NCBI GenBank assembly: GCA_024679065.1
Contig: JAGIQG010000004.1
Location: forward strand, 50,220,001-50,284,000
Source: Sphyrna mokarran
Lineage: Eukaryota
Direction of reading: 5' to 3'
DNA: 64,000 nucleotides
A model generated the notes under the pieces. It saw only the letters and a program-made list of their open reading frames with translations. It did not search any database and was not told the DNA's origin. The translations under genes and the position numbers were made by a program. Positions 8,299-45,340 of the stretch are shown here, in pieces (position 1 is the first letter of the stretch; every line of letters starts with the position of its first letter).

Positions 8299-10379
8299 AT
8301 ATCTGGTGCTGCGAGAGCAGAAACCAATATCCTGGGTGAATTCTGTGGGGGACTGAAGAAGTGACCGAGCCACGACCTGAAGAAGAGACGGATGCTGGCA
8401 TGAGATAAGATTTGTCTTGGTCTATCTCTTTATCTCGGATCAGTGCTGTGACCCTTCATCCCTTATGGAGGACACTGACAGGTGACTGTATTCGAACCTA
8501 AATTATATTGTGCATAGTGACCCCCTTGATCTCATGTGGATTTGAATCAAGGTTACATAAGTTTATTTGGGCAAGGAACCCCTTGATCTTGTGCAGATTC
8601 AGATCAGGGTTATACAGACTTAGGGGTCAGGGACCCTGTGATTTGATTCTGGTACTACTTTGGGTCAGGGATCCTGCAATTTGATTTTGCTACCAGGAAA
8701 TTTTATTACCATTTTTGCCAGGGACACGGTATACTGACATTATGGGACAGATTCCTAGACAAGACACAGGTATTATCTGGTACATGACTGTTTGGAGAAG
8801 AAGGGGAATTTATCACAACAGGAGGCACCCAAATCAAACTTGGCCAGCTTTATTAGAGGCCAGTGAGCTCCCATCAGTAAAGAAACAAGCAGGCTGACTC
8901 CATATGGTAGAGAGAGGGCGTAATTTGATCGAGAGCCTGGTGTAATAGGGTATAGCCAATCGAAGTGAATTGCTTCAAGTTTAATAACTTGCATACAGAT
9001 CAGACAGATTTGAGTTCTGCCATTTAGGAAAGGTGGCATTACATTACATCTGAAAAGTTATAAGGACAGTTAACCATTTAGGCACACAGTAGATTTGATT
9101 TTGTACTTGGCCTGTGTTGGTTACAAAGGCAGAGCGGTGGAAATTAATCAGATTGCTGCACATTAGAATGCTTTCAGTATTTCTTTGTGCATCTGTGCTC
9201 CAAGTGATAAGATCCAGTTGTGTGCTCTTGTAAAATGTTTTGTTTTAATGTGCAAGGGTCTTAATTTAGTAGGGATATTTAAAGATGATAAAAATAGATC
9301 TTATTTTGGATTTTCTGGATCAGGCTTTTGTAAATTTAAAAATCTATTCTAGATAGGAATAATTCTTTCATTGTCAGTTCTAAGTGTTTGAAGAGTCCAT
9401 CTGAGTGAACTTACACCCCTGCCCTTCTGCTGTAATGAGCAGAGAATTAACCCATTCTGTCCCAGACAGCATAGATCTTAGTGTTTATAAGATTTGCAGT
9501 AATTTTAGGACAAAGTCAAAATTTTTAAAAAATCTAACAGAAGAGGGAGTTACATAAGATAGAATAGGAGCACATGTTTAAACATGTGCAATTAGTGAAT
9601 CAAACAAACCTGGAGTAGAGCTCATCATAAAGCGCACCCTGTTGTAATAATTTTTATATTTCAGTGTCTTCATGTGGTTTGGTCATTTGTTTGTTTTTGT
9701 GGAGTATTTATTGCAAACATTAAATGCAATGCTTTATATTTCAGTTTAACTTCAAAGGGGCTGAGAAATTGTGAAAACTGTTAAAGTATAAGATTTTTTG
9801 AGTATAATTACAGTTTAGAAGAAAGATGACTTTACCCAAATGCATGTTGGAAGCTACCATGTATGTTTCATAGTGGTTGCATGGATATTTTCTTATTTGC
9901 TTTAATGTTTTTCCCCTAATTGTGATATTACAACAGTGGGTTTGGTAGAGTTAAAATGAAAATTGGAAAGTAAATTAAAGTTTAAGAAATGATATTGACT
10001 TGAGGGAACTACGTGCTCTTTCCTTTGTCTTGAAGTAGAAATTATGCGAGAGTTAATTGAGAAGTTAAGGAATAAGTAACTTCACGGAGAGATTAGGCTA
10101 GGTACCACGAACAATCATTAAGTTGGAGGGATAATGCACATTGAAGAGGGATTGAGGCATGTGTAGATGGCAAGTTGAAGGATTGGGAAACTTTGAAATT
10201 GGGAAATGAAACGTGATGAGATGAAAAGACAAGTAGAGGGCATGAAGCCATTGGCTGATAGGCAGGTTGGGCTAGCTCATCAGAGTAAACAGGAGGATCC
10301 TCCCAGTTGCCCTGGCATGCTGCTGTTTCCCTATTCAGGCAATACAGAGGAAAAGGAGGAGTTGACCCCTAGACCTCTC

Positions 10380-11660
10380 CTTTGGGTTAAAAATCTCCTT
10401 GATGCTGTTCAGCTTCCTTGCCAATTGGCTGTTATTAAATGTGTTGCACATACAAAAGGGGACACTTCTTGCAATTAGGGAATGCCTGGGCTGATTCAGC
10501 TGCCAAGGCAGCAGCTATATTGGCCTCTGTTCCCACTGGAGGTAATCAGGCTCTAAATTGGGTACCTGCATTAGGGACAAAGAGTATGCCAGAGATAACT
10601 GAGCCTCAATGTTTACAGAGGGACACCTCTGATTCTGAGCACACAATGGAAGTCAATGGTATTCATACTCCTGGGCATGGGACCTCTGGCTTGCTTCAAT
10701 TAAGTTTGTATTCTGGATTCTTTATTACCAGTACTTATTGACTATTTTTATTCTTGTATCCACCTTGGCAAGGAGGGAATGGGACAGCTACTTCTAAACT
10801 TGGTGGCACACAGAGTTGAATACAGCAGCACAAACGCAGCTGGATCGATGCTTCAATTTGCATGAGAAATAATAAGGGTAAAGGAATTAAATGCCCTGTT
10901 GAAACCACTTCCTTGCCAGATGGCCCTTTTACCTGTATACAACTTTATTGAATTACCAAAAGTACATTGCTATAAATATTGAGTAAATGGATTGAAGCCT
11001 TCCCCACCAGGAATTGTACTGCACATAGTGGTGAAATTGTTGTTGACAGAAGTTATTCCCCATTGAGGTCTCCAAAATGGTGAGCTCAGATTAATACCAA
11101 ATTACACAGTACTCAATCAAACAACAACTGCAATGCACATATCCCCCACAGCCAGCAGGAATTGTGGAAAGGGCTAATGGAACTTTAAAAGAAAAATAAG
11201 CTAAATTGACTGAAGAAACTGGATTAGATTGGCTAAAGGTATTGTCCTTGGCACTGTTTCACATGCGAGTGATTTCCCCATTCACAGACCAGACTGGCAG
11301 CTGCAAAGATAGTCTACGGTCAGTCAATAAGGACTCCCTGGAATGCCCATAAAAAACCACTAGAGGGAGTATATCTCCAGGTAGTGGGGGAACAGTTGCA
11401 GAATTATTTGAAGCAATTAACACTTTCTTTGAAGTTTCTCCACTCCCTGGTGAAACAAGCACATCTTCCCAACAGCAGGGACAGCCACCTCTTGACATCC
11501 CATGATCAAACCCAAAGACTACATATTGGTAAAGAATTGGGATAGAAAGAAACTAGGACAAAGCTGAAGCAGACCTTTTCAACTACTACTGACCATGATG
11601 ACTTCTGTCAATCTTGAAGGGTGTCCAAGTTGGATACATTCTTCTGATTAGTAGAAGATT
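10380..11660 (+). pseudogene. ERV pol remnant (RNase H C-terminus and integrase)
   Basis: LLDAVQLPCQLAVIKCVAHTKG..GNAWADSAAKAAA; WIEAFPT; YPPQPAGIVERANGTLKEK; multiple stops and frameshifts. Confidence 0.85.
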
Positions 11661-15903: not shown

Positions 15904-16539
15904 CAGGAAAAGAACTGGGGACCCTCAAAGTCACCACCTCGGCACTTCTGAATGTGATTATCAGTTTCTTGGCAGCAGTTATGCCTGGAGGTTACAGAAG
16001 TCAGTGAATGATGGAGTTGAGCGCCAGCCAGAGATTCAGACTGAAGCTTTGATGAGAGAACTCGCCTCTCGGTGGGATGGTCTAAGACGTCCTTCCAACA
16101 CTGTCCTTGAACACTGTAGTGATGCTAAACCTGTTCCAGCTTACATAATCTGTGGCTTTTTTCAATTCAGTGAACTCATGGGAAGTATATTCTACCAGAC
16201 AAATTGGTGAGTTTGCTTTTGCTGCCAAAATATACTTCATGCAAAAAAAACAAGAGAACATTACAAATATTTCAAAATGACCATCACAAAAAGTATAATG
16301 ATATTCAAGTTCTCTGCATAAGTCACAGACTTTTGTCCCTATATTGGTCCCTATATGGGAGTCTTCAACAATAGGCATAGCCTAAAGTCAAGAATATGTC
16401 TTGTTAGGACGGCGGCGCGGGCTCGTTGGGCCGAAGGGCCTGTTTCCCGTGCTGTGTTGCTCTTTGTTCTTTGTTTGACATTTCAATTTTTCCCAATAAA
16501 ATGCTTTATTCGTAAAATTTCTGAAAAGTTGATCACTGA

Positions 16540-16772
16540 ATGGACACTTTTTAGCACCTTCTCAGCCTTCTATATCCCTTTGTCCCATTCCACCTCCTCC
16601 CACCCTGATAATATAAATCTCCGCTAATTCTCTTTGCTCTTACCTCTGACGAAGGGTCATCTAGACTCGAAACATTGGCTCTATTCTCTCTCCACTGATG
16701 CTATCAGACCTTTTCCAGCATTTTATGTTTTTGTTGCAAATTCCAGCATTCGCAGTATTTTTGCTTTTATCT
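16540..16772 (+). mobile_element. Second Penelope-derived short repeat family with a minimal hammerhead motif
   Basis: CTGACGA-stem-GAAAC core followed by ctctccac..gatgct..cagacc..ttccagcatt; related copies at ~22495-22650 (-), ~31140-31230 (+), ~31950-32045 (-), ~40630-40710 (-) and ~47180-47235 (+). Confidence 0.65.
16641..16680 (+). ncRNA. Degenerate minimal type I hammerhead ribozyme
   Basis: CTGACGA (16646-16652), stem II GGGTC/GACTC, GAAAC (16669-16673); the stem III palindrome ACGT is mutated to ACAT. Confidence 0.5.
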
Positions 16773-16804
16773 TAATATTTATGAACAAGCCGCCTCTGTA
16801 GACG

Positions 16805-16960
16805 AGGCTGGGGCGGGGGTGCGGGGGCGAGTTTGGGATGGGAGAAGTGATTGAACCTCTGTTTAACGGCATTTATCTTTCGGGCAGATCTCGCCGTTTC
16901 TGTGTGTGTGGGGTGGGGTGTTGGGCGAGGCGCTCCATCTGCAAAGCGGCCAATAAACAG
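16805..16960 (+). promoter_or_regulatory. Putative promoter of the IgSF gene (GC boxes, CCAAT)
   Basis: GGGGCGGGG at ~16810-16818 and CCAAT at 16950-16954, in CpG-containing sequence 130-280 bp upstream of the ATG. Confidence 0.5.
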
Positions 16961-17085
16961 AGTCAGGCTCTGGGTACAAACCGCAGTTTGAAGCAGACTA
17001 TCGGTGAGGGGGGAGCTCTGAAGGGGCAGGACTCTCTGTCCTCAGCAACAACAGCAGCTGTACCGTTTAACTGCCAGTTCTCAAC

Positions 17086-17140
17086 ATGGGAAAGTGGATT
17101 CTCCTGCACGCTGTGCTCACGGCCGCAATCCTCCCTGCAG
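17086..17140 (+). CDS. Exon 1, signal peptide MGKWILLHAVLTAAILPA
   Basis: ATG in good context (caacATGG), hydrophobic leader, phase-1 donor CAG|gtgtgt. Confidence 0.85.
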
Positions 17141-20100
17141 GTGTGTGTCCCGGAAACTAAAGTGCAATATCTTCCCATTCAAGAACATTTGACAGTTTAA
17201 TTCTCTTTCAATGGCGCTCCCTCCCTGATCATTTGGGGATGTAAAAGGTTTCAGTGAGTCCTGAACTTGTGCAAAGTGTTGTAGTGTGAAATGTTAACTC
17301 TGACACTCTCACTCGATAGATTCTGCTCGCCTTGCTGAGTGTTTGCAGTGTATTCATTGCTGATACTCTTTTTCTCCCCACAGTTGCTGCGAATCCCACT
17401 TTCCGTGTGGGTCAACACCCAGAAGTGCTGAACACGAGCAGAGGCTCCAATGTGACTTTCTACTGTAGCTTCCCATTTGCCCGGGACATTTCCACTGTCC
17501 GGGTGAAATGGTGGAAAGAGGGCGAGCGGAGTTTCCTCCAGGCAAAACGTGATAGAAGATATCGATTTGAAATACGGAATAAAGCCAGCGCTGTCTTTAT
17601 GCTCCTGAATGTGGATGTCCCGGACTCCGGCCGCTATTACTGTAGAGTTAGCAACGAGGGCAAAGCGGACAATGGGACCGGCACAAGGCTGCTAGTTACC
17701 GGTGAGTGACTGACAACTGAAAGTATTTCCTGCAAAGTGAGAACAACCCTGGGAAATGTAACTGGAGCTCATCCCGCCACTGCAAGCCCAGTCTCAGTCC
17801 TTAGTGAGGTTACAGATTAGTCAGAGAGATAGATTAGGGTCAGCACAGCGATTCTAAACATTAACACTGAAATCATTGACCGGGGTCAGGAGTGCTCTCC
17901 CTGGTAGTGAGCTGGAGGCAGCTCCAATCAAGGCATTAAAGAGGATATTGAATAGAAACAAATGTGCAGGGATACGGGGACTATCGGCAATAATCCTGGA
18001 TTTTATTGGAATATTTGTTTGGGGACTGAGTACCCTGGAGCTGAAGAGTTTGCTTTCCTCTGGAAATCCTGCTGATGGAGGGTCGCTGTCTCAGAAATCC
18101 TCAGCCCCTAAGCTGCAACTTTCAATAGAAGAGACCGGTCAGGTTTCTGTCTTCTTCGCCTGTGTATCTCACCGCCAAAAATCTAAATTGGACAAAATAT
18201 ATTCAGACACAGAATGAGAATCCAGCAAAACTTAAGAGAGTAAACAAAACTGTGAGCTTTTCAGCATTTTTAAAATCTTTCGCCTGAAAATGACTGACAG
18301 GGATCTGGAATAAAATTCATCCCACTCATTAGCAGACGTTTTAACTCGTTTATTTCACGTCATAAATTTGCAATGACTCAAGGTTTGTTACAAGTTAACT
18401 TATTTGCAAGATTTCAAAGACACACTTGTTTATCAAATTTCTCCCTCGGTCATTTTCCTTTTGGTTGTTGTTGCATCTGTCAAAAACTTCATTTCTGAAC
18501 TGGATTAAATAACATTAAAATCGGAGCTATTGACAGACTATTAACTAAATTAATCTGGAAATAAAGTTGTATCATAGCAAGTAGAGAAGGAAAGTATTCA
18601 GTTTGACTGAGGAGAAAGATCCCGTTCTTTTTCCGAAAAGAAGTTCCAGGAATTAGTCTCATCCCGAGATCCAGCTGCTGATGTTCAAAATGAGTTTAGG
18701 ATGGTTTGGAAATCTCTCGGAAAGAAGGTAGTTCATCTTCAGATACATTCAGGAGTGAGACTGGATCCATCTTTCCGCTGTGTCTGTTTTACTTGGACAT
18801 TTGAAGCTGCTTTCTTCATCTCTGTCTCTGCTCACGGGGACAGCCTCACACCGAGAGACTCTTTCCCGTTTTTTCCCGGAATCTCTCGCCTCATTCTGTA
18901 AACCTAACCCTCTCTGTAGACTGTCACCTCAATAGAAATATGAAAGGTCCAAGATACGCAAAATATATTCCATGTAACTGACACATTCGAGGGTAGCATG
19001 GTGGGACAGTGGTTAGTACTGCTGCCTCATACTCCAGGGACCTAGGTCCAATTCCCAGCTTGGGTCTCTGTATGGAGTTTGCATGTTCTCCCCGTGTCTC
19101 CGTGGATTTCCTCCGGGTGTTCCGGTTTCCTCCCACAATCCAAAGATGTGCAGATTAGGCGGATTGGCCATGCTAAATTGCCCTTTATTGCCCCTTAGTG
19201 TCCCGGGCTGTGTATGTTAGAGGGATTAGCAGAGTAAAAATGTGAGGTTTCAGGGATGGGGTCTGGGTGGATTGTTGTCGGCGCAGATTCGATGGGCCAA
19301 ATGGCCTCCTTTGCACTATAGGGATTCTATGATTCTATGACACTATCTGGATATTAAAGGTTGATCCTTGTGTGTTAAGACTCACATCACGGCCAGAGAG
19401 ATGTCAGGATCCTGGCACTTTGAAATTATTAATGACTTTTCGATGTAGAATTTCATCAACAGTCAGTAGCAAGCAGAGGGAGTGAACTGAGTGTTGAGCG
19501 CCTTATAAAGAACAATCAGTTTGGACTTCGAACGTACCAGCAAAGTATTAACAGTAAAGGGGTTTATTATTAAACTAGGGAAGAGGTTGGTGACAATTTC
19601 AACTGTTGAATGACTGATACGAACGTATTTGCAAAATGTATTCAGTTTATTCATTTTATTCTGTGTGACACTTTAAGCCATTCAAGGCTTTGAAATCAAC
19701 AGGAGTGTTCTCAGAATGACTCAAATTCCCTCTGATATTTTAGTAATTTCCGTTAGCTTTCCACCTGCACGAAGAGGTGTTTCTATGTTCTCACAGGAGG
19801 GAGAAAACCAGAGCGAAAGAGAGAAATGAGGATTTTGAAGGCTAGAATGAGTTGCTGACCCAGTAGAGGTGTTGGAGGGAGAGTTGGAATTCGCATAGAG
19901 TGAATGGGCCACTGCTGATGGGATCAAACAACAGTGACCCAACTGTGAATATATCCGCTGAGCATTACCAAAATGGGATGGGGGCAATCAACGGACAGAT
20001 TTGAATATAAGGATGAGGATTTTGAATTTGATTGTTAGGAGGGAGGGGGGTGAGATCAAGGGAAATCGACACGCGCTGGGTGGGGGGAGGGGAGCGGGTT

Positions 20101-23100
20101 CCTTACTCTGGAATAGTTCATTTGGGAACTTTATTCCTCGAGGTGGTCACTGTTACCCAGGCTTTAGCAGAAGAGAGATAGAAAGGGGAGGATTGGAAGG
20201 GTAGAGTTTGAGCAGGGGACGTCGGGTAAAAGACTGGGCTTGCAATTGATTAGTAAAGCAAGTTTCATATTTCCAGGCAGCTTGGTTCTGTGAGGGGGGA
20301 GATGAAAAATGAAGATGTCTTTTACGGCGTTATTGATATTTAGTCCGGGGGCACTTTTGGTAGATTCCATATCTAAAGATTAGAAATATCAGCCGGAAAG
20401 ATGGAGACAGCTTTAGGATCCAGCGAAAAGCTGGAGAGTTAGGAGAGGGAGCATCTTCGGCTTCTATATTGAGGTTTGCCCAGACTCCAGCTGATATTCC
20501 AGAAGATTTGGATATAAATGAAGAACGAGATCTCAATCATTGAACACGGTACTCAGAGTGATACCCAGTCACTAAAAGCTGCTGATGACAATATCATCAC
20601 AGCTAACTTTGAGATACCGTGAGGACCTCAAAGTAGGGACACAGCTGACTGGGGCTATTGACATTAACAGTGTTAGGGAGATTGCTGCAGAAGCAGCAGT
20701 AATCTATTACAAGCAACTTTATTCATGACTTCCACTAGTACGGTCCATGTTATAGCAACCTGACAGGAGCGACCCAGACAAGGAGTGGGAGTAGATTTTT
20801 AACATGTGCGTCAGATCAGAATGGACAAGTTAGTGGTATTTGGAGAGAATGATAGGGCCAAAAAGACAACAAAAAAAAACTGCCTTGTCTTTAAGCTGTG
20901 GGAAACAGCTCCAGATAACTGTACCATGAATGTATTCACTCGGAACCAACAGCTTGATGTGGAGATTGGCTCATTGCGCTATACCCTCTATCAGAATGGG
21001 TTGCCGGGACTATGTCTATACCCCCGGATTCTTCTCCGCCTCAGCAACCCATCCTTTCCGAGTGTAACACGAAACTAATTACAACAATCGAGTTGGCCAT
21101 CATTCATTAGACCCGCTGCATGGGTACGCAAACTGTGCAATGCGTACCCACAAACGTTCAATATCAACTAATATTAAATGTTATCTGAAATACACAACCT
21201 AAGAGAGGAGTGGAAATAAACAGAAACAAAAGGTATATTCGACACAAAAAGCACTCTCCTTCTACACTATCATTACCCCAAATGACCGCACGTACCATCA
21301 CCGTTTCTTCTGAGTTTTATCTAGAAACGGTCACATTAATATACCAGATATGAGCTCCTGTATTATTCAGAGTTAAACATCACTTTTGGCCCTTCGCTTT
21401 TAGCAGCTTTGATGGATCGAGAGTTGTTCACTCAATCTAAAAATAATGGAATGCGTTTATTCGAGAAAAAAGGGAAGTGTTGTGGCTGGGGGCAGAATGA
21501 GAGGTTTCTCCATTCCCTTCGGAACTGGGTGAGGCCTAATCTTTCCACAGGGAATATCAGGAGGCCATTCAGTCCCGTGGAACCAGCCCATCCGATCATT
21601 GTTCGTCATTGACTTCATTTCACACACTCACCTTTGGCTAGCAAAGATCTTACCAATTACAGATTTAAAATGTAAAACTGGTGTAATGATTCCTTTGGAG
21701 ATTGAAATTTCCTTATTTCGCTTCTGAAATGTCTGGCTCGAATTTTTAGACTTTACCCCGAGTCCTAAAGCAACAGATCTAGTTTCCAGTTGTCGTCCCT
21801 AGCTCTTCCTCTGAATATTTTAAAATCATCCCCTTAATATTTTAAACTCAAGGGAATGCAACCCCAGTTACTGTGACTGATTGAAGTGCAAATATCATCC
21901 GGGTAAATCTCCACTCGCTTCAATGTATCCGTTCTCTAGTGTGTTCAGAATTGTTCAGTTACTTCCGATATGGTCTTTGCATTGCTGGCCTTTTAAATTA
22001 TGTTCCAAAGCAATTCATGACATTTTAATCGTTGGTGTACCTGGATACCGTCTCCCACCTCCCCCATCCCTCACTCCCACCCATCTGTCTCTTTCGAATC
22101 TCCACTGACCATTTACCATTTTCACCATTTACAATAAACTCTTTTTCTTGCCTCCAGGAATAGACCTCATATTTACCAATGTTGAAATCTATTTGGCACA
22201 GATTTACCCTTTCACCTGGAATTATGAAGAAACTATGTTCCTAGTTACGCTGTTCTCAATGTCTGTGAGTTAGGCAAATGCGGATAAGTGGCTTTGTATC
22301 GCACCATCGAAAGCGCCAACGAGTCAATTAAGTGACTAGTTGAGGCCTCAGCTCAGATCAAATCAGAGTAACTGCACATTGTCCCAGTCTCAGTCTCCAG
22401 TGCCTCGTGCGCTTTCAATAATCAGCCTTCAATTCGATGGATTTTAACCCTGCACAAAATTTGAACATTCCCACACAACAAATCTCGTTGGGATAATAGC
22501 AAATTACTGTGAATGCTGGCAAATGAAACAAAAACTGAAACATGCTGGAAAATCTCAGCAGGTCTGACAGCAACTGTGGAGAGGGAATGGAGCCAATGTT
22601 TCGAGTCTAGATCACTCTTGCTGTCAAACCCCCTGAGATTTTTCAGCAAATATTACTGGGTATTGTTCGTATTGATTTATAACCAAGTCTAGGCACTGAC
22701 AGTCCGATCAGTGAATTAACCCGAGTCATTCCAAAGGCTCTGCAATTATTTAGAATATAAATGTGTGCAGTGCAAATTCAAACCTCTGTCGCGCTCCAGT
22801 ATCTTTGTGAAGCGTTTAGCAGGGTCGGTCGATGTCAGAAATTGGATAAGACTCGGGCATTGAAACAAATACCGGCAACTGTGTTTGAGAATAGAAATTG
22901 CTTTTATTCTGGACGGGATTAGGAAACAAGGCGGGGAGCCTCCCACTGTCCCAGTTTCTAATTCCAGAGTCATTCTCCTGTCGTAACTTCGGCGGAAAGC
23001 CGGGAGAAATGGCTCTGACTTTGATCTCCTTCACAAGTAAACGCCAATATTACAAAGGTAACTGCAATCGGGAGAAAATAATTAAGGATCCCGATGTGAA

Positions 23101-26100
23101 TACGAGTGGGAGAGAAATAATTGAATACGAAAAAGATACATGTTTTCAGAGTGAAATGAAGCCAAGAGAACGATTAAAGGTGGGTTTGAATGAAATCTGA
23201 TGAATTTCCATCAGAATAATGTGACATTTCTCTCCTCCGCTCCCGAAGCTCCCCCCGCTTCTCCACAGATTGTCCCCACTCTCTTTGGAAAAGAATCGCC
23301 GGTTTTCCTCAGGCTCGCCTGTAACTCCGGCACATTTCACTCCAAGGAGCTGAGCTTCAAATGGTTTGTGAACGGCTCCGAGATTGTAAAGGGGATCCGC
23401 ACAGAGGCAAAGCCATCAGGACCGGGCGAACTCTTCCAGCTTTCCAGCTTTCTGGAGGAATCGCAGCCTGTGCAGAATGGGACAGTTTATACCTGCCGAG
23501 TCTCCTACCTGGACAGCCAGATGCAGACCCATTACACCTACATGTCCAGCCTGGCAGGTATGGTCACTCTAAGAGGTCGCGAATCTTGCATGTCTTGTTA
23601 ACTGATGTGATGGACAGCATTGAATTTTAGATTTCCTGGGGGGCACTGGGTGGGAAAATCTCCTGTTTTTATCGGGAGGGGAAATGATGAAGGACTGAAA
23701 TAATTCGATAATTTAGATTGGAATCCTAGATGATATTTTGGATGACTCCGCCTTAGTGACAATGAAAACGGCACTGACTTTATTATTCAGTGCAGGCTTT
23801 ACTAAATGGCCAGAACCGTCTATATGGAATGTCCTGGCTGAAAGGGTGGATGGGGGGAACAAGAATTTTATAAAGGCTATTGGATATCAATCCGAAAAAA
23901 AAGGGATTTGTAAGGAAGAGAGATTCAAATGGAAATAACTAGATTAGTCTTCCATAGGTAGGAGGGGCCAAGTGGCCGCCTCCCGTGTTGCACGTTTGCC
24001 CTATCAGTGGCATTTCCCTTTCCAAGTAGAAGCGGCAAGCTGAAATGTTCTGGGCGCATGTTTTTTAGCATTAGAGTGATCCAGTAACGTCCATTCCCCA
24101 CTTTGGGGCAAGAGCTGACTGAAAACATTGAAATAAGAGATGCTCACACCCGTTCACATTCGCAGCGCTGATGCCAGCCGGCAGAGTGATACAATAGAAC
24201 CTGCCCGTTTCATATTAACGCAAAAGATCACCAACCTAACAGTTAACTTCATTCGAAGTCACTCGGATGGCATTGACCTTCATTGATAAGAAAGTGTTAA
24301 CAGCGCATCCATATTCATTAGAGAGTGAAGAACCCAAAAAACAATGTCTAGTTTTTGCGACAATGTGACCTGGAATTGAACAAGCACGTGTATTAATATG
24401 GTACATGTTTCTGTTTAAAGTGCTTCAAGAAAAGAACTCTTTCTCCAAATGCTTTCTTGAAACCTTGAAACTTCTTCAAGGTAGCAATACTCTTATCCTT
24501 TGGGAAAACTCCTATAGTTGAGAAATTAAAATAGAAACTGTTCGATTTTAAATGGCATTGACACGTTTTAAAAGCAGAACTCAGGGAAGAGTGAGCTTTT
24601 ATGGTGAATGGGGGCACAATTAGAACGGGAGAGGAGTGAAACGAGAGAGGAGTAAATTAAAACATTTCTCCTTTACTCAATACCCCATTGTCATCCTGAC
24701 AATTTTAACAATACGTGCGTGTTTCTAACCAATATTATTTGCACCTACTATGTTTACTTACCAGGATGTGGTAACAGTCAGATTAAATCATACTGTGTAT
24801 CAGTGCTTGAATTAAGTGTTGAAAGATGCATATGTTGTATTGTTCACACATTTCCTGTGATGTAATATAACTATTACATTGAGTTAAAATATTTGCGCTT
24901 TGACATTTTGCAGAGCGAAAATCAGACATTATACCCTGGTGGATCTATATCTGTATCGGGAGTGGGGCTCTCCTCCTGCTCTTGATTATTACATCAATTA
25001 TATGTAAATTCTGTGTATGCAGAGGTAAGCATGCTGGAATTTGCAAAATGGTTTTGATTTCGAATTTTCAATATATTTGATTTTTAACACGTTACAGTAA
25101 ACTGAAGTGATATTGTAAGTGAATTATATTTGTCTGAAGTAACTGTTTTATGGATTTCAATAACATGTTTAGTGAACACTGAGAAAGTGTCTGTAAGCAT
25201 GGAGAAGTCTTCAGTGATAAATGTTATTGCATTTATTGTGCATCACTGGACAATCTCTTGTTAGGCATGACATCCACATGTGAATAGAATCCATTTTGTA
25301 GGATCTCACTAAATGCAAGAGAGGCAAACAGATGAATCACTGCCAGAGATACTTGCGCTATGTATTGCATCAAGTATCCTAACATGACATATTTCACAGT
25401 GCACTCCTATAGCCTAGTTCTGCCCCATGGTAAATATGACAGAAAAGAGTTGTATTTTAATTATTGCAAGCGCAGTATGTACGTTATCCTGGAGTCATGT
25501 TGTTTCCTTACAAATCTACAAGTAAAATTATGGTAACACTCCTTTATTTCAAATGCTTACATGTTAGATTTTCTCAAAAGCTTTTTAAAATAATAAATTC
25601 TGCATTTTATCAATAGCAAAGACCATAAAGTAACGACGTTATATAGGTTACATCGGGTTGGTTCCAATACATCCAAAGGCCATGGACCACATCAACTTGT
25701 AACCTAGATAAAGGATACTATTCAAATATTGGGCTCACTCCCATTCATCCTCACAATCTAGATATTGGAGATCATCTTACCTTCCTTCATAATCTTGAAT
25801 AAGAGACCAGCTTGTGATGTTGAAGCTAATTGGATCTATCGAGTAAAGTTAATAATTAACTAAATTTAATTAGATTAATTCATATTCAGGCTATTTGCTT
25901 TGAGGAATAGCTGGTATTGACTCTAATAATTATTACTGAGACTCATTTGATTGCCAATTGATATTAATCAGTTGTTCTGAGCTGATGTGTAGATTTTGTT
26001 TTCAAGTGAGGTGATGAGAAATGAATCATTAAAATGAATCAATGAACAATTATGTTAATAATTAGTGGACATCTGTTTTGAAAAATAAGAGCTCTATTAA

Positions 26101-27461
26101 ATTATGAAATTGAGATGTTTCCATTAATTGATGTAGTTCACAGGCAGTAATGCATTGAAAGGCAATTTGCTAATGTTTAAAGTTTTAAGTCATTCTATTT
26201 ACTATCCATTTATTCTAGGCAAACAGAGGAAAAGAGAGAAAAGATGTGTTCAGGAAAAGCAGGTAACTTCCAATAAGCATTTTAAAATAAGCTCTTCTGA
26301 AATCCCTTAACGAATTTTGTGTAAAATAAAATACCCTAAACAACAAAAAAGAAAATTGAGATTATGCAACAAAGGTTTTCATTGAATTTTGCTGTGGTCA
26401 TTTCATTTTGAGTCCTAGGCATAAGTAGAATGTAATACATAGAAATTATTATGTTCCCTTTGTTATCTTGTTGGATTATTGAGTGACTTTTATTTATATA
26501 TGTGCATATGTATATTTAATCATTCACCTGGAAGTATTAACTCATGCTGGAGTAGAACTTTATAGACTAGGTTTCCTCTGGTACCTTATTGAAGTGATGT
26601 AGAGATGTCAGTGTTGGACTGGTATAAACACAGTAAGAAGTCTCACAACACCAGGTTAAAGTCCAACCAGTTTATTTGATAGTAATCTCACAAGTTTCAG
26701 AAATAGTGTTCTTCCATTAAGTGTGTGGAAGGTTCTGATCAGACAAGGGCATAAAAAGTCACACATAATTTACAGAATACTGATTAGAGTGCAAATCTTT
26801 ACAGCTAATCTGCTATTCAAATCTTAAAGATGCAGACAATGTGAGTGGAGACAGCATTAGCAAAAGTTAAAAAGATGTATATTGTCTCCAGACAGGACAG
26901 TAAATCAGATTTTACAAGCCCAGGCAAGTCATGGGGATTACAGATAGTGTGACATGAACCCAAGATCCCGGTTGAGGCCATGCTCATGTGTGTGGAACTT
27001 GGCTGTCAGTCTACTGAGCGATTCTGTGCTGTTGTGTGTCGTGAGGGCCGCCTTGGAGAATGCTTACCCAAAGATCTGATCATGGGTTGGGTTGCAACCA
27101 AGTACTCACAGAAAAGGCTAGCAGTCAGGTGAATAGTGAAAGTAGAAAAAGCCTGGGCCAAGCACAATCCATTTTCTTGTGGGGCACAGAGGGATTTGGA
27201 TACTATCAAAATCAATCTCCTGTCAATCTCTTTTGTACTATTGTCTTGCAGCATATGCAAAAAGCAGCTAATAACGAGATGGTATATACAGCTATGGATT
27301 TCAACAACCTAGCTAAAGACACAAAGTACCAGCAGATGGAGAAGAGAAAAGCATGTCCCCATCTGCCACCAAGAAACCAGCAGAGAGGTGACAAGGTCGT
27401 TTATGCAACACCCCCACCCAAACAATACCAGGGCAGAAAGATGGGCCGCTCTGTGCAATGA
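17086..27461 (+). CDS. Six-exon IgSF type I membrane receptor: signal peptide - VJ-type V domain - C1 domain - TM - tyrosine-motif tail (SIRP/NKp30/VJ-C1-like), 348 aa
   Basis: Exons 17086-17140, 17384-17701, 23249-23557, 24914-25024, 26219-26262 and 27252-27461 total 1047 nt (348 codons + TGA). All introns are GT-AG with phases 1,1,1,1,0, and the joined frame has no stop. Confidence 0.9.
17384..17701 (+). CDS. Exon 2, V-set Ig domain with germline J-like G strand
   Basis: Acceptor ttttctccccacag; motifs VTFYC, VKWWK, DSGRYYC and NGTGTRLLVT; phase-1 donor G|gtgagt. Confidence 0.95.
18990..19340 (+). mobile_element. HE1-like tRNA-derived V-SINE in intron 2
   Basis: tRNA-like head (ggtgggacagtggttagtact), V domain, (gattctat)n tail. 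Confidence 0.9.
23249..23557 (+). CDS. Exon 3, C1-set Ig domain
   Basis: Phase-compatible acceptor tttctctcctccgctcccgaag; APPASPQI...RLACNSGTFHSKELSFKWFVNG...FQLSSFL...GTVYTCRVSY; phase-1 donor CAG|gtatgg. Confidence 0.92.
24914..25024 (+). CDS. Exon 4, transmembrane segment ERKSDIIPWWIYICIGSGALLLLLIITSIICKFCVCR
   Basis: Acceptor ttttgcag, donor AG|gtaagc, long uncharged hydrophobic run, phases match the flanking exons. Confidence 0.9.
26219..26262 (+). CDS. Exon 5, basic juxtamembrane cytoplasmic exon GKQRKREKRCVQEKQ
   Basis: Acceptor tttattctag, donor CAG|gtaact; bridges phase 1 to phase 0 as needed to keep the last exon in frame. Confidence 0.8.
26596..27078 (-). mobile_element. Penelope 3' fragment in intron 5 of the IgSF gene
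   Basis: Colinear with 32957-33400 and the reverse complement of 150-610. Confidence 0.85.
27252..27461 (+). CDS. Exon 6, cytoplasmic tail with MVYTAM, KYQQM and VVYATP tyrosine motifs
   Basis: Acceptor ttgtcttgcag, in frame to TGA at 27459-27461; AATAAA signals near 27638 and 27785. Confidence 0.85.
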   Translation, partial: HMQKAANNEMVYTAMDFNNLAKDTKYQQMEKRKACPHLPPRNQQRGDKVVYATPPPKQYQGRKMGRSVQ

Positions 27462-28667
27462 ATGCAAGCACAACATATCAGTTACTTGCAAGAAGTTGCT
27501 TCTACAAACTTATCTGATCCTGAGATAACAGTTCAAATATATATACTTGTGTCACTTTTTATAGAGCTAATTAAAACCAAATGTTTTCTTACTGTCCCTT
27601 CATGAATGTTGCTGACTAACAGCTTTTGAGTTACAAAAATAAATAATATGATGGCAATTGATGATAGTGACAATAGCTTCATTAGTGTTAGGCAGCAATT
27701 GTCTTAATGTCGCATTCTGTTAAGGAACTGTGAGGTTTACGCGAATTAAAACTAGAAACTAAAAATGGTTTTGTATCAAATCACAATAAAAATGTCCAAA
27801 CCTCTCCCCTCCCCTCAACACTGACATTCTTACCTTGAAAAGCTCAAAGTACGCTAGAAACCAAAACCTGCACAGTGCACTGTCAGAACTATTTCACTAT
27901 TTTGTTCCTCTTGGTTGAGTGAGTTTACATGCAGAACCGATAGCAAATATTGCTGAGGGATTGAAGTAATATTTTTGGAAAGTAAGTTGTGAGGACATAA
28001 AACGAAACAATGATTGTGAACGTAGAGAGATGTTTTGTGCAGCACCAACAGAGAAAATTATAAAGTAAATAATGTCTCAGCTAAGTTTAATGAGCAACTT
28101 CTTCACAAACAGAGTGGGTGGTGAATAAGTGTCGTTCAGATCAATCCTTCCACAGACTATGTACAGTTTGGTCTGTGGTGTACTCCTGTCCAAGTACAAA
28201 TGAGCAGCTAAATTGAGACCAGACTGTAAACCAGGAAAACATGAATACAAGAGAGCACATTCATTTGTACCATTCCACTAAAACCTGTTTGATCTCAAGA
28301 CCTAGGAATGTCTTCCAGATAATGTTTAATATATGGCCACATTTAACCACATATTTATGTGGCTTTTCATAGGAGCAGACAAAGAAAGGAATGTGGCTAT
28401 TCAGGCCATCAGTGCCTAGGCCAGCCCTTTGAAAATGCTGTTGAATTACTACCACTGCTTTTAGAATCTTTTTTTAAATAAAACCATTAATTGTACTGTC
28501 AATTGCTTCTAATAGGAATCCCTATCAGAGATCAATTTTTTCCATGCTAAAAATAATATATTTGAGCCAAAGCAAATTTCAATTACTTTCAGTTTCGGAC
28601 AGTTTTCTCTGCGCACTGCTCACTGCTGTTTCCTGCTTTCCAACACAGCCCACATATTTGCCATTAT

Positions 28668-32956: not shown

Positions 32957-34556
32957 ACAGTAAGAAGTCTCACAACACCAAGTTAAAGTGGAACATGCTT
33001 ATATGGTATCATAAGCCACTAGCTTTTGGAATGTTGCCCCGTCCTCAGGTAAGTGGGAGTTCTGTTCACAAGTAGAGCATATAAAGACACAAACTCAATT
33101 TACAAAATAATGGTTGGAATGTGAGTCTTTACAGATAATCAAGTCTTAAAGTTACAGGTAATGTGAGTGGAGAGAGGGTTAAGCACAGGTTAAAGAGATG
33201 TGCATTGTCTCCAGCCAGGAAGGTTAGTGAGATTTTGCAAGCCTAGGTACGTCGTGGGGATTACAGATAGTGTGATATGAACTCAAGATCCCGGTTGAGG
33301 CTGTCCTCATGTATGCAGAACTTGGCTATCAGTGTCTGCTCAGCAACTCTGCGTTGTTGTGAAGGCCATCTTGGAGAACACTTACCCAAAGATCTGAGGC
33401 CCATGACCACTGAAGTGTCCCCCAACAGGAAGGGAACACTCTTGCCTGGTGAATGTCAAGCAGTGTTCATTCATCTGTTGTCATAGTGTCTGCATGGTCT
33501 CCCCAGTGAACCATGTCTCAAAACATCCTTTCCTGCAACCTATCAGGTCAACAACGTTGGCTGAGTTGCAAGTGTATGTGCCGTGTACCTGGTAGATGGT
33601 ATTCTCATGTGAGATTATGTCATCCGTGTCAATGACCCGGCATGTCTTGCAGAGGTTGCTGCGGCAGGGTTGTGTGGTATTGTGGTCACTGTTCTCCTGA
33701 AGGCTGGGTAGCCTGCTGCGGACAATAGTCTGTTTGAGGTTGTTGCGGTTGTTTGAAGGCAAGATGTGGGGGTGTGGGGATGGCCTTGGTGAGATGTTCT
33801 TCTCCATCAATGACATGTTGAAGGCTCCAGAGAAGATGTCATAGCTTTTCCGCTCTGGGGAAGTACTGGACGATGAAGGGAAGTCTGTCCGGCGTGTCCT
33901 GTGTTTGTCTTCTGAGAAGGTCGATGCAGTTTTTTCTGTGGCATGTCGGAACTGTCGATCGATAAGTCGAGTGCCATATCCTGTTCTTATGAGGCCATCT
34001 TTCAGTATCTGGAGGTGTCTGTTGCAATCCTCCTCATCTGAGCAGATCCTGTGTGTTCGGAGGGCTTATCCATAGGGGATAGGTTCTTTAACGTCAGCAA
34101 AGAAGCTGAAGAAATGGAGTATCATGAGGTTTCCATGGGCTTGTGGTACAGTGAAGTGCTGAAGTGACCATCCTTAATGGAGATGCGTGTGTCCAAGAAT
34201 GCAACCAATTCTGGAGAGTAATCCATGGTGAGTCTGATGGTGGGATGGAACTTGTTGATATCATCATATAGTTGTTTCAGTGATTGTTCACTGTGATTCC
34301 AAAGGAAAAAAATGTCATCGATGTACCTAGTGTATAGAATCAGTTGAAGGTCCTGTGCGGTGAAGGTCCTATACATGATGTTGACATATTGAGGTGTGAA
34401 TTTGGTCCCCATGGCTGTCCTTTGTGTCTGGATGAAAAACTGGCTGTTGAAGGTGAAGGATGAAATGGATGAAGTGGCTCGTGCTACAAATAAACTGTTG
34501 GACTTTAACCTGGTATTGTGAGATTTCTTACTGTGTTTACCCCAGCATCTCCACAT
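32957..34556 (-). mobile_element. Penelope-like element, 5'-truncated (RT and GIY-YIG remnants) with inverted terminal fragment
   Basis: TAMGTKFTPQY and YTRYIDDIFFLW (RT); TYTCNSANVV..IGC..C..WFTGETMQTL (GIY-YIG); + strand terminal fragment 34470-34556; flanks ggtggaactg / ggtggtactg are a probable TSD. Confidence 0.92.
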
Positions 34557-44098: not shown

Positions 44099-45340
44099 CT
44101 ACAAACAAGAACTAGCCTAGATTGAAACTAGTCATTTTCAATTGATTAAACTCATTGACCTTTTGGACTGAATGGCCTATTTCTGGGCTGTAAATACTTT
44201 GTAATTTGCACTCATGAATCAAAGTTCAGTGTTAATTGACAAGACTGGTAGGTCATACGTGGGAGTGGCATTGGAATCAAAAGGAGATAATCAGAATTTA
44301 CAAACTGAATTTGAGAATCAGTGTGTGAATATACAAATCAGAAAGTGCTCAATGCAGACAAATATAAATTGGGGAAAATGGATGTTAGATATACAGAAAG
44401 ATTTTGGTTTTGAAATTGCAATATGCGAAGTTGAGGGAAACACAGGAAATCTTAATAAACCTAATGTTAAATATGTCCTAAAAAATGAAAAGCAGAGGGC
44501 AATAAAGACAAAGGAAGCTAAACCACAAAACAGGGATTCCCAAGTTGTGGGTCATGAATCCCAGTGGGATGACAAGATGAACAATTGGGATCATGAGCTC
44601 TAGGACATCAATGACGGCAGTGGAACCAAGTCACCGATATGGACAAGCCTGAGACTAGTAGTGAGGTTGCTGTAAATGTGGAAGATAAGTTTGACTGTGA
44701 GCAAGGCCCTAACCACTGACACCAATAGATCTTGTGAAGTGGTCAGTGTCTTTGGTTATCTTTGGAGTCTGTATCCCTGCTGTTTGAACCCCTATCCTGC
44801 ACCTCCCACTCACATATCACTCTGGGTTCATACCCAATGTGAAGCATTAGAATAGAATCAGGCAGAAAAATGTTTTAGAAATGGATGGGTCTGCGTCAAA
44901 TGATATAATTTAATTGCATCTTTACAGTTGTCAAAACAAGGAAGACATTCAGGGACTGGAACACAGAAAAGGCCATGAAGCTGATCCTCAGTGTCAGAGT
45001 TATCACAACAACCTCTGGAATAGGGATTTCCATTCCCAAAGAGAAACTGGCAGACAAAATATTTCATCAATTAAAAGGACAGATTTGCAATGTTACTTTC
45101 AAATAAATTGAGGATGGGATGAGAGAGCGATAGAGAGTGGAGGCAGATGATGAGGCTGTACCCAGAGTCAATGATTCCATTAATGGAAATTATGCTGTAA
45201 AATTGCAGAATTAAAAATCCTTCCACTGGGTTCCCTGTAACTGCAGCATTGTATCCCCTACAATAACTAAAACTGAGCTGTCTGGCTACACATACTGGGA
45301 AGTACAGATCACGCACCCTGTCACCATTATCTAAAATATG

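What the first reader, a model, noticed from the sequence alone, without database searches (positions are those of the whole stretch)
17086..27461. Intact non-rearranging VJ-C1 receptor built like a single antigen-receptor chain
Seen: one exon encodes a complete V domain with a J-like G strand (YYC-x9-GTGTRLLV) and no flanking RSS. It is followed by one C1-set exon, a TM exon and two cytoplasmic exons, with phase-1 introns between domains. Known: C1-set domains are largely restricted to Ig, TCR, MHC/B2M, tapasin, SIRP and B7-H6-like proteins, and a germline-joined VJ plus C1 is the proposed layout of the pre-RAG antigen-receptor ancestor. Inference: in a cartilaginous fish this could be an uncharacterised VJ-C1 lineage rather than a true SIRP (V-C1-C1) or NKp30 (V only).
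Basis: partly seen in the sequence, partly recalled or inferred. Interest (0 to 1): 0.85.

Follow-up and report, generated by a model that had tools for sequence, protein, structure and literature searches.

The report
Shark SIRP-like V–C1 membrane receptor gene
This is an intact shark gene for a cell-surface receptor with one antibody-like variable domain and one constant domain; it is conserved across sharks and skates and belongs to a large receptor family, so it is a useful but not exceptional clue to how antigen receptors arose.

Summary
A six-exon gene lies on the + strand at 17086-17461... precisely 17086-27461: leader, VJ-type Ig exon, C1-set exon, TM exon and two cytoplasmic exons. 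All splice sites are canonical, the domain introns are phase 1, and there is no RSS.

It is not a lone relic. Twelve other elasmobranch species have an annotated, colinear orthologue. NCBI calls these 'SIRP-alpha-like', 'SIRP-gamma-like', 'TCR-beta-like' or 'uncharacterized'. The orthologues form one clade (100/99 on C1). That clade sits inside a Chondrichthyes-wide V-C1-TM family, many of whose members carry SIRP-alpha-like ITIM tails (16 of 25).

The V domain is short and I-set-like. It has no inter-chain cysteine, an uncharged TM and a conserved long tail. I read it as a germline-encoded, self-signalling immune-type receptor, not an antigen-receptor chain.

By architecture it is neither a true SIRP (only one C1) nor NKp30 (it has a C1).

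First readers of this scan noted at least 8 similar VJ-C1 receptors elsewhere in this genome.

The parts
17086..17140 (+). Exon 1: start codon and signal peptide (18 codons plus 1 base), phase-1 donor
   Evidence: Read directly. Donor CAG|gtgtgt. tblastn of orthologue P0153 residues 1-18 lands here.
17384..17701 (+). Exon 2: single-exon VJ-type Ig domain (V-set / I-set borderline) with a G-x-G J-like G strand, two Cys and three N-x-S/T sites
   Evidence: Pfam V-set 8.1e-9 and I-set 3.1e-8. Family V HMM 140.8 bits, the only V hit in the six-frame scan of the window. 53-69% identical to 8 orthologues. No RSS.
23249..23557 (+). Exon 3: C1-set Ig domain, with two Cys 58 apart, a conserved Trp, and a Y-x-C-x-V motif after the second Cys
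   Evidence: Pfam C1-set 8.2e-8. Family C1 HMM 115.4 bits, the only C1 hit in the window. 50-73% identical to 8 orthologues. Clade support 100/99.
24914..25024 (+). Exon 4: short stalk, uncharged transmembrane helix and a Cys-rich juxtamembrane stretch. It is 111 nt and phase 1-1, so it can be skipped in frame.
   Evidence: 62-81% identity to orthologues. NCBI isoform P0157 of S. torazame lacks exactly this exon.
26219..26262 (+). Exon 5: basic membrane-proximal cytoplasmic segment (14 codons plus a split codon)
27252..27461 (+). Exon 6: cytoplasmic tail (69 codons plus TGA) with 4 Tyr, a PxxPxR motif and a C-terminal Tyr motif found in all orthologues
   Evidence: 38-81% identity to orthologues. 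tblastn E 1e-33 with P0153.
27570..27643 (+). Candidate polyadenylation signals (ATTAAA at 27570, AATAAA at 27638), 110-180 nt after the stop codon
   Evidence: Pattern scan only. Not verified by reads.

Best explanation
This is an intact gene for a type I membrane protein with a signal peptide, one germline-joined VJ-type Ig domain, one C1-set domain, a short stalk, an uncharged TM helix and a cytoplasmic tail of about 120 residues.

Shown:
- It is the orthologue of a gene present once, or in very few copies, in sharks and a skate.
- It belongs to a Chondrichthyes-wide multigene family of V-C1-TM receptors. Other members of that family carry SIRP-alpha-like ITIM tails.

Inferred mechanism:
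- It acts as a germline-encoded immune-type surface receptor of the SIRP kind.
- The membrane-distal V domain binds a conserved ligand, probably a host ligand. The C1 domain serves as a spacer.
- The receptor signals on its own through its tail. The tail has two conserved tyrosine motifs, which look like degenerate ITIMs, and a PxxPxR SH3-ligand motif. It does not signal through charged-TM adaptor partners.
- Skipping the in-frame TM exon would give a soluble form.

It does not rearrange and does not look built to pair covalently like an Ig or TCR chain.
For: Gene structure and domains.

Orthologues:
- phmmer of the V exon against 1.84 billion representatives gave P0004 (347 aa, 60% identity, E 7e-35).
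- Annotated orthologues of 326-366 aa exist in 12 elasmobranch species.
- The 5 orthologues that were run map exon for exon onto the window.
- Identity is 53-69% (V), 50-73% (C1), 62-81% (TM) and 38-81% (tail) to the 8 aligned.

Clade: the C1 tree puts 13 of 13 group rows, window included, in one clade at 100/99. Its internal order follows shark taxonomy (quick tree).

Family:
- About 60 further V-C1 proteins were found. All 16 of those checked by name are chondrichthyan.
- 16 of 25 members with at least 60 residues after the C1 domain carry a canonical ITIM.

Tail and TM:
- The TM has no charged residue, and the ectodomain has only the four intradomain Cys.
- PxxPxR is present in the window and in 11 of 12 orthologues.
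- The C-terminal Tyr motif is present in all 8 aligned orthologues and the window.
- The first Tyr motif is present in 7 of those 8.

Other:
- A TM-skipped isoform is annotated in S. torazame.
- SIRP-alpha (2wng) matches the orthologue profile at E 2.5e-12 and SIRP-gamma at 2.9e-11.
- The Atlas lists SIRP-alpha clusters among the nearest of the Rhincodon orthologue.
Against: - No transcript evidence. No RNA run was listed, so the joins rest on splice signals and on gene models from other species, whose own support I cannot see.
- The tail has no canonical ITIM, ITSM or ITAM (0 in the window and 0 in 12 orthologues), so the signalling direction is unknown.
- The orthologue profile matches Ig lambda light chains slightly better than SIRP-alpha (1.6e-13 against 2.5e-12).
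- The V-only profile does not bring SIRP or NKp30 into its best 60 PDB matches.
- No tree with curated SIRP, NCR3, PRARP or Ig/TCR references could be built.
- The ligand and the expressing cell type are unknown.
Confidence: 0.72

Rival explanations
1. It is a surviving member of the lineage from which rearranging antigen-receptor chains arose. On this view it is a pre-RAG-type VJ-C1 chain closer to Ig/TCR than to SIRP or NKp30, and it pairs through its V and C1 faces.
For: - It has a VJ exon plus a C1 exon plus a TM exon, with phase-1 introns.
- The best single-chain PDB matches of the orthologue profile are Ig lambda light chains, covering both domains (E 1.6e-13).
- The V-only profile matches shark V-NAR (3.9e-13) and CD79b (1.8e-12).
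- The C1 exon's best PDB matches are Ig heavy-chain constant domains.
Against: - There is no inter-chain Cys, no charged TM residue and a long signalling tail.
- The V domain is short and scores best against I-set domains of titin, Robo and contactin.
- Its nearest relatives are dozens of paralogues with ITIM tails.
- The margin of Ig lambda over SIRP-alpha is about tenfold in E-value, which decides nothing.
- First-reader notes place the MHC genes of this genome on other pieces (unchecked).
Confidence: 0.1
2. It is one of the 'highly divergent shark NCR3 (NKp30) family genes' already described in the nurse shark (Kinlein et al. 2021, which I could not read). It would then be already known under another name.
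For: - The sister group (K-rich tail) has a V-only isoform that NCBI names NCR3-like (P0019).
- In the V tree the two groups sit together at 89 SH-aLRT.
- The G strand carries the N-glycosylated G-x-G motif that I recall from NKp30.
- PMC12227049 section 19 lists eight nurse shark NCR3 entries.
Against: - The gene has a C1 domain and an uncharged TM. NKp30 as I recall it is V-only with a basic TM residue.
- Human NKp30 is absent from the best 60 PDB matches of the V exon, of the V-only profile and of the orthologue profile.
- Three protein searches returned no nurse shark protein and no protein that a depositor had named NCR3.
- A first-reader note puts an AIF1-linked NKp30-like gene on another piece of this genome (unchecked).
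Confidence: 0.1
3. It is a true SIRP orthologue (alpha, beta or gamma lineage) that lost one C1 domain and its ITIMs.
For: - NCBI names 4 of the 12 orthologues SIRP-alpha-like or SIRP-gamma-like.
- SIRP-alpha and SIRP-gamma appear among the PDB matches and among the Atlas leads.
- Paralogues carry tails with T/V-x-Y-A-x-L and E-Y-A motifs like those I recall from SIRP-alpha.
Against: - There is one C1 exon only and no decayed second one.
- No family member that I saw has V-C1-C1.
- There is no canonical ITIM.
- The similarity to SIRP-alpha is no greater than to Ig lambda.
- The names are automatic best-hit labels. The same orthologue group is also called TCR-beta-like and uncharacterized.
Confidence: 0.05
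4. It is an unexpressed or decaying gene copy whose open frame is fortuitous.
For: No RNA run could be listed. The window is rich in transposon fragments.
Against: - There are 348 open codons over six exons with six canonical splice pairs.
- Structural residues are conserved, and the tail is up to 81% identical to orthologues.
- The clade's branch order follows the species tree.
Confidence: 0.03

Closest known systems
SIRP family (SIRP-alpha, -beta, -gamma)
   Same: - N-terminal V-type ligand-binding domain followed by C1-set domain(s), then a TM, encoded in the germline.
- The family behaves like paired receptors. In Heterodontus, P0172 has this gene's kind of V on an ITIM-type C1, TM and tail.
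- Paralogues carry ITIM tails.
- PDB profile match to 2wng at E 2.5e-12.
- SIRPs were already proposed as kin of the antigen-receptor precursor (PMC2785349, abstract and section 16).
   Different: - One C1 domain, not two.
- No canonical ITIM (unlike SIRP-alpha) and no basic TM residue (unlike SIRP-beta as I recall it).
- The V domain is shorter and I-set-like.
- Orthology and CD47 binding were not tested.
[quoted passage not shown] 2019, J Immunol; seen only as a citation in PMC10751288 and PMC11599192)
   Same: As I recall it, PRARP is a non-rearranging VJ + C + TM + tail protein in non-mammalian vertebrates, which is the same layout. A turtle protein of that layout (P0176) matches the family profile at E 1.2e-13.
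   Different: - The paper was not held, so PRARP's defining features are recalled, not read.
- P0176's V scores only 18 bits against the window's V exon, and its C domain does not match the family C1 HMM at domain E 0.01 or better.
- PMC10751288 calls PRARP MHC-linked. This gene's linkage is unknown.
NKp30 / NCR3
   Same: A non-rearranging VJ-type domain with a G-x-G G strand. The sister group's V-only isoform is auto-named NCR3-like.
   Different: - It has a C1 domain, an uncharged TM and a long tail.
- Human NKp30 is not among the best 60 PDB matches.
UrIg and UrIg2 (elasmobranch non-rearranging Ig-like genes)
   Same: A single-exon VJ with a split leader, followed by C1-type domains, in elasmobranchs (PMC12227049, sections 4 and 7).
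   Different: - UrIg has three C1 domains and is secreted.
- UrIg2 has nine to eleven C domains.
- This gene has one C1 domain and a signalling tail.
- No UrIg sequence was available for comparison.
Ig light chain / TCR chain
   Same: V(J)-C1 order. This is the best two-domain PDB match (Ig lambda, E 1.6e-13).
   Different: No RSS and no rearrangement, no inter-chain Cys, no charged TM, a long tail, and a short V domain.
IgNAR V and CD79b Ig domains
   Same: These are the best single-domain VJ-type PDB matches of the V-only profile (3.9e-13 and 1.8e-12). As I recall, both are V-like domains with a shortened C'-C'' region.
   Different: They sit in different proteins and architectures. The similarity is at the level of domain type only.

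Membership tests
SIRP | Ectodomain of one V-set and two C1-set domains (PMC2785349 abstract) | tested here: not met
   The six-frame scan of all 64 kb with family HMMs finds one V exon (140.8 bits) and one C1 exon (115.4 bits). The next best C1 hit has E 0.5. tblastn with own exons and with 120 family domains gave only one stray hit, which the HMM did not confirm.
SIRP | Cytoplasmic ITIMs that recruit SHP-1/2 (SIRP-alpha; PMC2785349 introduction) | tested here: not met
   The pattern [SIVL]xYxx[IVL] occurs 0 times in the window's tail and 0 times in 12 orthologues. For two of those the scripted tail was cut short, and I checked them by eye.
SIRP | Both domains nest in the SIRP clade, with synteny to the SIRP locus | not testable with these tools
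The PDB profile E-values put SIRP-alpha (2.5e-12) level with Ig lambda (1.6e-13).
NKp30 / NCR3 | A single VJ-type Ig domain with no C domain (recalled; PMC12227049 calls NCR3 a 'VJ domain gene') | tested here: not met
   A C1-set exon is present and conserved.
NKp30 / NCR3 | Location in the MHC class III region (recalled: next to AIF1) | tested here: inconclusive
   The window holds no MHC gene. First-reader notes put an AIF1/NKp30-like segment and the MHC genes on other pieces. These notes are unchecked.
Rearranging antigen-receptor chain (Ig/TCR) | Separate V and J segments flanked by RSS | tested here: not met
   V and J are one exon. No heptamer or nonamer occurs in 16500-24000.
Rearranging antigen-receptor chain (Ig/TCR) | C1-set constant domain after V | tested here: met
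   Pfam C1-set E 8.2e-8, above the cut-off.
Rearranging antigen-receptor chain (Ig/TCR) | Covalent or adaptor-dependent pairing: an inter-chain Cys in the connecting peptide, charged TM residues and a very short tail (established knowledge) | tested here: not met
   Only the four intradomain Cys lie in the ectodomain, the TM is uncharged, and the tail has about 120 residues.
UrIg / UrIg2 | VJ followed by three (UrIg) or nine or more (UrIg2) C1-type domains (PMC12227049, sections 4 and 7) | tested here: not met
   One C1 exon only.
PRARP | Non-rearranging VJ + C + TM + tail layout (recalled; paper not held) | tested here: inconclusive
   The layout matches what I recall. Sequence membership was not tested because no named PRARP sequence was available. 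The putative turtle relative P0176 is distant.
Chondrichthyan V-C1-TM family (unnamed; NCBI 'PTPNS1-like' and similar) | V and C1 domains alignable with the family, and the same exon-domain order | tested here: met
   - The window's V matches 96 stored proteins and its C1 matches 70.
- Family HMMs score 140.8 and 115.4 bits.
- Trees.
Chondrichthyan V-C1-TM family (unnamed; NCBI 'PTPNS1-like' and similar) | Members lie on one chromosome per species | tested here: inconclusive
   - In 6 species the orthologue and paralogues are reported on a contig of identical length: Heterodontus 99651266, Heptranchias 66547297, Hemiscyllium 84986831, C. punctatum 85023262, S. canicula 198790641, Carcharodon 193532774.
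- For this genome there are only first-reader notes of similar genes 4.05, 4.18 and 12.2 Mb away on the same piece.
- The window itself holds no second member.

The most novel reading that the evidence does not exclude
The whole chondrichthyan V-C1-TM family, with this slowly evolving near-single-copy gene as its most conserved member, is the sister of, or a direct survivor from, the non-rearranging VJ-C1-TM gene that the RAG transposon split. On this reading the protein pairs non-covalently through its V and C1 faces like an antigen-receptor chain. It would be a living, membrane-bound model of the pre-RAG receptor, complementary to the secreted UrIg.
Probability: 0.1. Interest if true: 0.8.

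Novelty: new member of a known kind. Interest (0 to 1): 0.4.

Why it matters
Non-rearranging genes that keep a joined VJ exon next to a C1 domain are the raw material for arguments about how Ig and TCR arose. SIRPs, NKp30, PRARP, UrIg and UrIg2 are the cases in print.

This gene adds three things:
- a membrane-bound VJ-C1 receptor conserved from skate to sharks;
- a large, apparently undescribed cartilaginous-fish family with paired-receptor behaviour;
- a sister group with a lysine-rich tail.

A proper description would give comparative immunologists a new chondrichthyan innate receptor family. That description needs trees against the named families, chromosomal position relative to the MHC and its paralogons, and expression data. 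It would also give one more calibration point for the V-C1 ancestor. As a single locus it is a solid but ordinary member of that kind.

Tried and rejected
- **Second or decayed C1 exon** (which would make it V-C1-C1). One tblastn hit of the skate C1 at 20053-20175 (E 4.4e-4, 1 of 120 queries) was not recovered by the family C1 HMM at E 10 or better. I rejected it as chance.
- **Weak own-exon hits at 47383-47523**. The sequence there has stops and no Ig pattern. Rejected.
- **ITAM-like reading of the two YxxM motifs, and the other first-reader note of a CD28-like PI3K tail.** YxxM is in the window twice, but the first one occurs in only 4 of 12 orthologues and the second in 3 of 12. These motifs are not conserved, so this is not the core mechanism.
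- **Canonical ITIM or ITSM.** None found.
- **Paralogous exons in the window.** None found.
- **RSS.** None found.
- **RNA support.** The look-up of sequencing runs listed no run, so read laying could not be used.
- **Synteny.** I used the contig lengths shown in the protein tables as a proxy. I could not place the white shark orthologue's 193.5 Mb contig relative to the MHC chromosome 19 named in PMC10751288.
- **Reference trees.** The trees therefore cover only the chondrichthyan family plus one reedfish outgroup on a very long branch.
- **Papers not held.** Flajnik 2012, Fu 2019, Flajnik 2023, Ohta and Flajnik 2015, Kinlein 2021, Ohta 2019. What I say about them is recalled or taken from citing papers.
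- **Supplements.** They were closed. The supplementary gene tables of PMC10751288 and PMC12227049 may list this family or its chromosome.
- **Joined protein.** Every search and tree used single exons of the window, or database proteins of other species.

Full report
**Observation.**
- leader, 17086-17140;
- V(J), 17384-17701;
- C1, 23249-23557;
- TM, 24914-25024;
- first cytoplasmic exon, 26219-26262;
- last exon, 27252-27461, with TGA at 27459-27461.

Every internal boundary is AG...GT with a pyrimidine tract. The first four introns are phase 1 and the last is phase 0. The exons add up to 1047 nt, which is 348 codons plus the stop.

The codons split by the introns give the residues that the orthologues show at the same points. 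I checked this by eye against alignment A1. Every search used one exon at a time or database proteins of other species.

**Domains.**
- Pfam scores the V exon as V-set (E 8.1e-9, 36.1 bits, the whole 109-position profile) and almost equally as I-set (E 3.1e-8). It scores the C1 exon as C1-set (E 8.2e-8, 32.9 bits against a cut-off of 21).
- Each domain has exactly two Cys and the conserved Trp.
- The G strand carries the G-x-G bulge motif in a J-like context. The spacing from the second Cys is ten residues, not nine.
- The V domain is short: 59 positions from Cys to Cys and 44 from the Trp to the second Cys.
- Its best PDB matches are I-set domains of titin, Robo, contactin and NCAM, both as a single sequence and as a V-only profile. 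Among single VJ-type domains the best are shark V-NAR (E 3.9e-13) and CD79b (E 1.8e-12). Neither NKp30 nor SIRP is in the best 60.
- I therefore describe it as a VJ-type domain without an evident C'' strand.
- No RSS heptamer or nonamer lies in 16500-24000.
- A six-frame scan of the whole window with HMMs built from the family's V and C1 domains finds exactly one V exon (140.8 bits) and one C1 exon (115.4 bits). The gene is V-C1, not V-C1-C1, and has no neighbour of its kind within 64 kb.

**Orthologues.**
- phmmer of the V exon against 1.84 billion cluster representatives gave 496 proteins at E 0.001 or better. The best single-domain hit was a 347-residue protein of Heptranchias perlo at 60% identity.
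- Searches from that protein and cluster look-ups gave full-length relatives of 326-366 residues in 12 species: Heptranchias, Cetorhinus, Carcharodon, Heterodontus, two Scyliorhinus, Rhincodon, Stegostoma, Hemiscyllium, two Chiloscyllium, and the skate Leucoraja.
- NCBI's automatic names for this one group vary. They include 'tyrosine-protein phosphatase non-receptor type substrate 1-like' (SIRP-alpha-like), 'signal-regulatory protein gamma-like', 'M1-specific T cell receptor beta chain-like' and 'uncharacterized protein'.
- Five of them, run by tblastn against the window, map exon for exon onto the six exons and nowhere else.
- Per-exon identity of the window to the eight aligned orthologues is 53-69% (V), 50-73% (C1), 62-81% (TM), 46-86% (cyt1) and 38-81% (last exon).
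- The TM and tail are thus at least as conserved as the ectodomain among sharks.

**Family and trees.**
- Around the orthologues lies a much larger set of V-C1-TM proteins. The window's V matches 96 stored proteins of 520 residues or fewer, and its C1 matches 70.
- Of the 20 non-orthologue proteins whose source I looked up, the 16 with a V-C1 layout all come from sharks, rays or the chimaera Callorhinchus. The four others are squamate multi-V proteins.
- There is a clear gap in score. The orthologues score 109-156 bits on V and 89-148 bits on C1. The next proteins score 93.5 and 64.3 bits.
- In the C1 tree (73 rows, 101 columns, IQ-TREE with bootstraps), the window and the 12 species form one clade with 100/99 support on a long stem. 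The window is sister to Scyliorhinus (97/74) inside a lamniform plus carcharhiniform set (98/88). The order of the other species follows taxonomy (quick version).
- In the V tree (59 rows, quick, SH-aLRT only), the shark orthologues form a clade at 86. Together with the skate they group with a second conserved set at 89.
- This second set ('group B') has a lysine- and arginine-rich tail, shares the start of the TM helix, reaches the chimaera, and is auto-named 'NCR3-like', 'NCR3 ligand 1-like' or 'Ig lambda-like'.
- With about 100 columns many deeper forks are unresolved. The only outgroup, a reedfish 'tapasin-related-like' protein, sits on a branch of 2.4-2.7, so the rooting is weak.

**Comparison with named families.**
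- A profile of eight orthologues searched against all PDB sequences matches Ig lambda light chains over both domains (best E 1.6e-13), SIRP-alpha 2wng (2.5e-12), SIRP-gamma 4i2x (2.9e-11), and TCR gamma and beta chains (about 5e-10 to 9e-10).
- The C1 exon alone matches Ig heavy-chain constant domains best.
- The Atlas look-alikes of the Rhincodon orthologue are V+C1 clusters, 'kappa light chain-like' and SIRP-alpha clusters (leads only).
- A family profile reaches a viper three-V ITIM protein, a turtle V-C-TM protein with a canonical J motif, a reedfish and a Xenopus protein at much weaker E-values.
- Sequence similarity therefore places the gene among the V-C1 proteins generally, about equally far from SIRP and from Ig light chains. 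It does not place it inside any named group.
- I could not build the decisive trees because no reference sequences could be brought in.

**How it probably works.**
- Shown: a signal peptide, two Ig domains with five N-x-S/T sites, no unpaired ectodomain Cys, a 26-residue uncharged helix with a small-x-small motif, a Cys-rich juxtamembrane stretch, a basic segment and a 69-residue last exon.
- The tail holds a first Tyr motif (present in 7 of the 8 aligned orthologues, lost in the skate).
- It holds a PxxPxR motif (window and 11 of 12 orthologues).
- It holds a C-terminal Tyr motif (all 8 aligned orthologues and the window).
- Neither Tyr motif fits the canonical ITIM. Position -2 is Met in the first, and position +3 is Pro in the second. 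No ITIM, ITSM or ITAM is present in the window or in the 12 orthologues.
- By contrast, 16 of 25 other family members with a long enough tail have at least one ITIM, and 0 of 14 group B members do.
- The window's two YxxM motifs are not conserved.
- Inferred: the protein is a self-signalling surface receptor of the SIRP kind. Its V domain recognises a conserved ligand, and its tail is read by SH2 and SH3 proteins after tyrosine phosphorylation. The sign of the signal is open.
- Two observations in other species fit an immune paired-receptor family. Heterodontus has a gene whose V is sister (99) to its orthologue's V but whose C1, TM and tail are of the ITIM type. Hemiscyllium has a near-identical copy with an Asp in the helix and the tail cut after the basic segment.
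- NCBI also models an isoform of the S. torazame gene that skips exactly the TM exon. That exon is 111 nt and phase 1-1 here too, so a soluble form is possible.

**Context.**
- Apart from this gene, the window holds transposon and retroelement fragments and a tandem duplication of about 11-13 kb (38977-50398 against 52590-62824, 78-87% identity). Each copy carries a Cys-rich ORF faintly like the IBR/RING2 part of ARIH2.
- Nothing in the window ties it to the MHC.
- In six other species the orthologue and paralogues are reported on contigs of identical length, so probably on one chromosome.
- First-reader notes of this scan report similar VJ-C1-ITIM genes 4.05, 4.18 and 12.2 Mb beyond the window on the same piece and on other pieces. 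They report MHC genes and an AIF1/NKp30-like segment on other pieces. These are unchecked notes.

**Literature.**
- I read PMC12227049 (outline, sections 4 and 7, passages). UrIg is VJ plus three C1 domains and is secreted. UrIg2 is VJ plus nine or more C domains with a TM. NCR3 is the 'other non-rearranging, MHC-linked VJ domain gene'.
- I read PMC10751288 (passages). NKp30 and PRARP are VJ genes in the MHC, and VJ-C1 precursors are proposed at 1R.
- I read PMC11599192 (passages), which lists the joined-VJ proteins.
- I read PMC2785349 (abstract, section 16). SIRP-alpha is V plus two C1 domains and was proposed as kin of the antigen-receptor precursor.
- Eight full-text searches found no paper describing a chondrichthyan V-C1 SIRP-like family.
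- This does not show that none exists. The papers most likely to bear on it were not held: Kinlein 2021 on eight divergent nurse shark NCR3 genes, Fu 2019 on PRARP, Flajnik 2012 and 2023, and Ohta 2015 and 2019. Supplements were closed.

**Verdict.**
The gene is a real, intact, non-rearranging VJ-C1 receptor that is not a SIRP or an NKp30 by architecture. It is also one orthologue group of a large SIRP-like family, already annotated automatically in a dozen genomes, and it has none of the pairing or adaptor features of an antigen-receptor chain.
- I file it as a new member of a known kind, the germline VJ-C1 immune-type receptors.
- Interest is moderate. It lies mainly in the family as a whole and in the untested possibility that the family stands close to the antigen-receptor ancestor.

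Noticed in passing
window 38977-50398 and 52590-62824: Tandem segmental duplication at 78-87% identity. Each copy carries a Cys-rich ORF on the - strand (39030-39407; 52465-53019). The ORF has a weak IBR/RING2-like match to ARIH2 (E 0.0064) and no Pfam hit. It may be an RBR-type ubiquitin-ligase gene or pseudogene pair.
   Followed up: partly
window 46202-46804 (-), 55846-57182 (-), 63190-63971 (-): Fragments of one LINE-type reverse-transcriptase family. Two copies are 96% identical over 900 nt.
   Followed up: no
window 5164-5538 (+) and 10206-10741 (+): ORFs that look retroviral to me, by recalled motifs only (an envelope TM-like Cys motif and an RNase H-like stretch). No Pfam hit at E 0.01 or better for the two ORFs tested. 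Observed only.
   Followed up: no
window 26630-27079, 32957-33536 and 1-592: Copies of one repeat (76-80% identity). One copy lies inside the last intron, just upstream of the final exon.
   Followed up: no
stored proteins P0172 / P0202 (Heterodontus francisci): A gene whose V domain is sister (99) to that species' orthologue of the window's gene, while its C1, TM and tail belong to the ITIM-bearing part of the family. This is a paired receptor, or an exon-shuffled or gene-converted copy.
   Followed up: partly
stored proteins P0190 / P0191 (Hemiscyllium ocellatum): A near-identical second copy of the orthologue, with an Asp inside the TM helix and the tail ending after the basic segment. NCBI names it 'SIRP beta-1-like'.
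   Followed up: no
stored proteins P0020, P0033, P0165, P0205-P0207 and others ('group B'): A second conserved V-C1-TM orthologue group from the chimaera to sharks and rays. It has a lysine- and arginine-rich, tyrosine-poor tail and the same TM start. It lies on the same contig as the window's orthologue in Hemiscyllium, C. punctatum, Carcharodon, Heptranchias, Heterodontus and S. canicula.
   Followed up: partly
stored proteins P0028, P0079, P0086, P0103, P0121 (squamate reptiles): Proteins with two or three tandem domains like this V domain, one with ITIM-type tails, auto-named 'titin-like', 'CEACAM1-like' or 'otk-like'. They are the nearest non-chondrichthyan relatives of the V domain.
   Followed up: no
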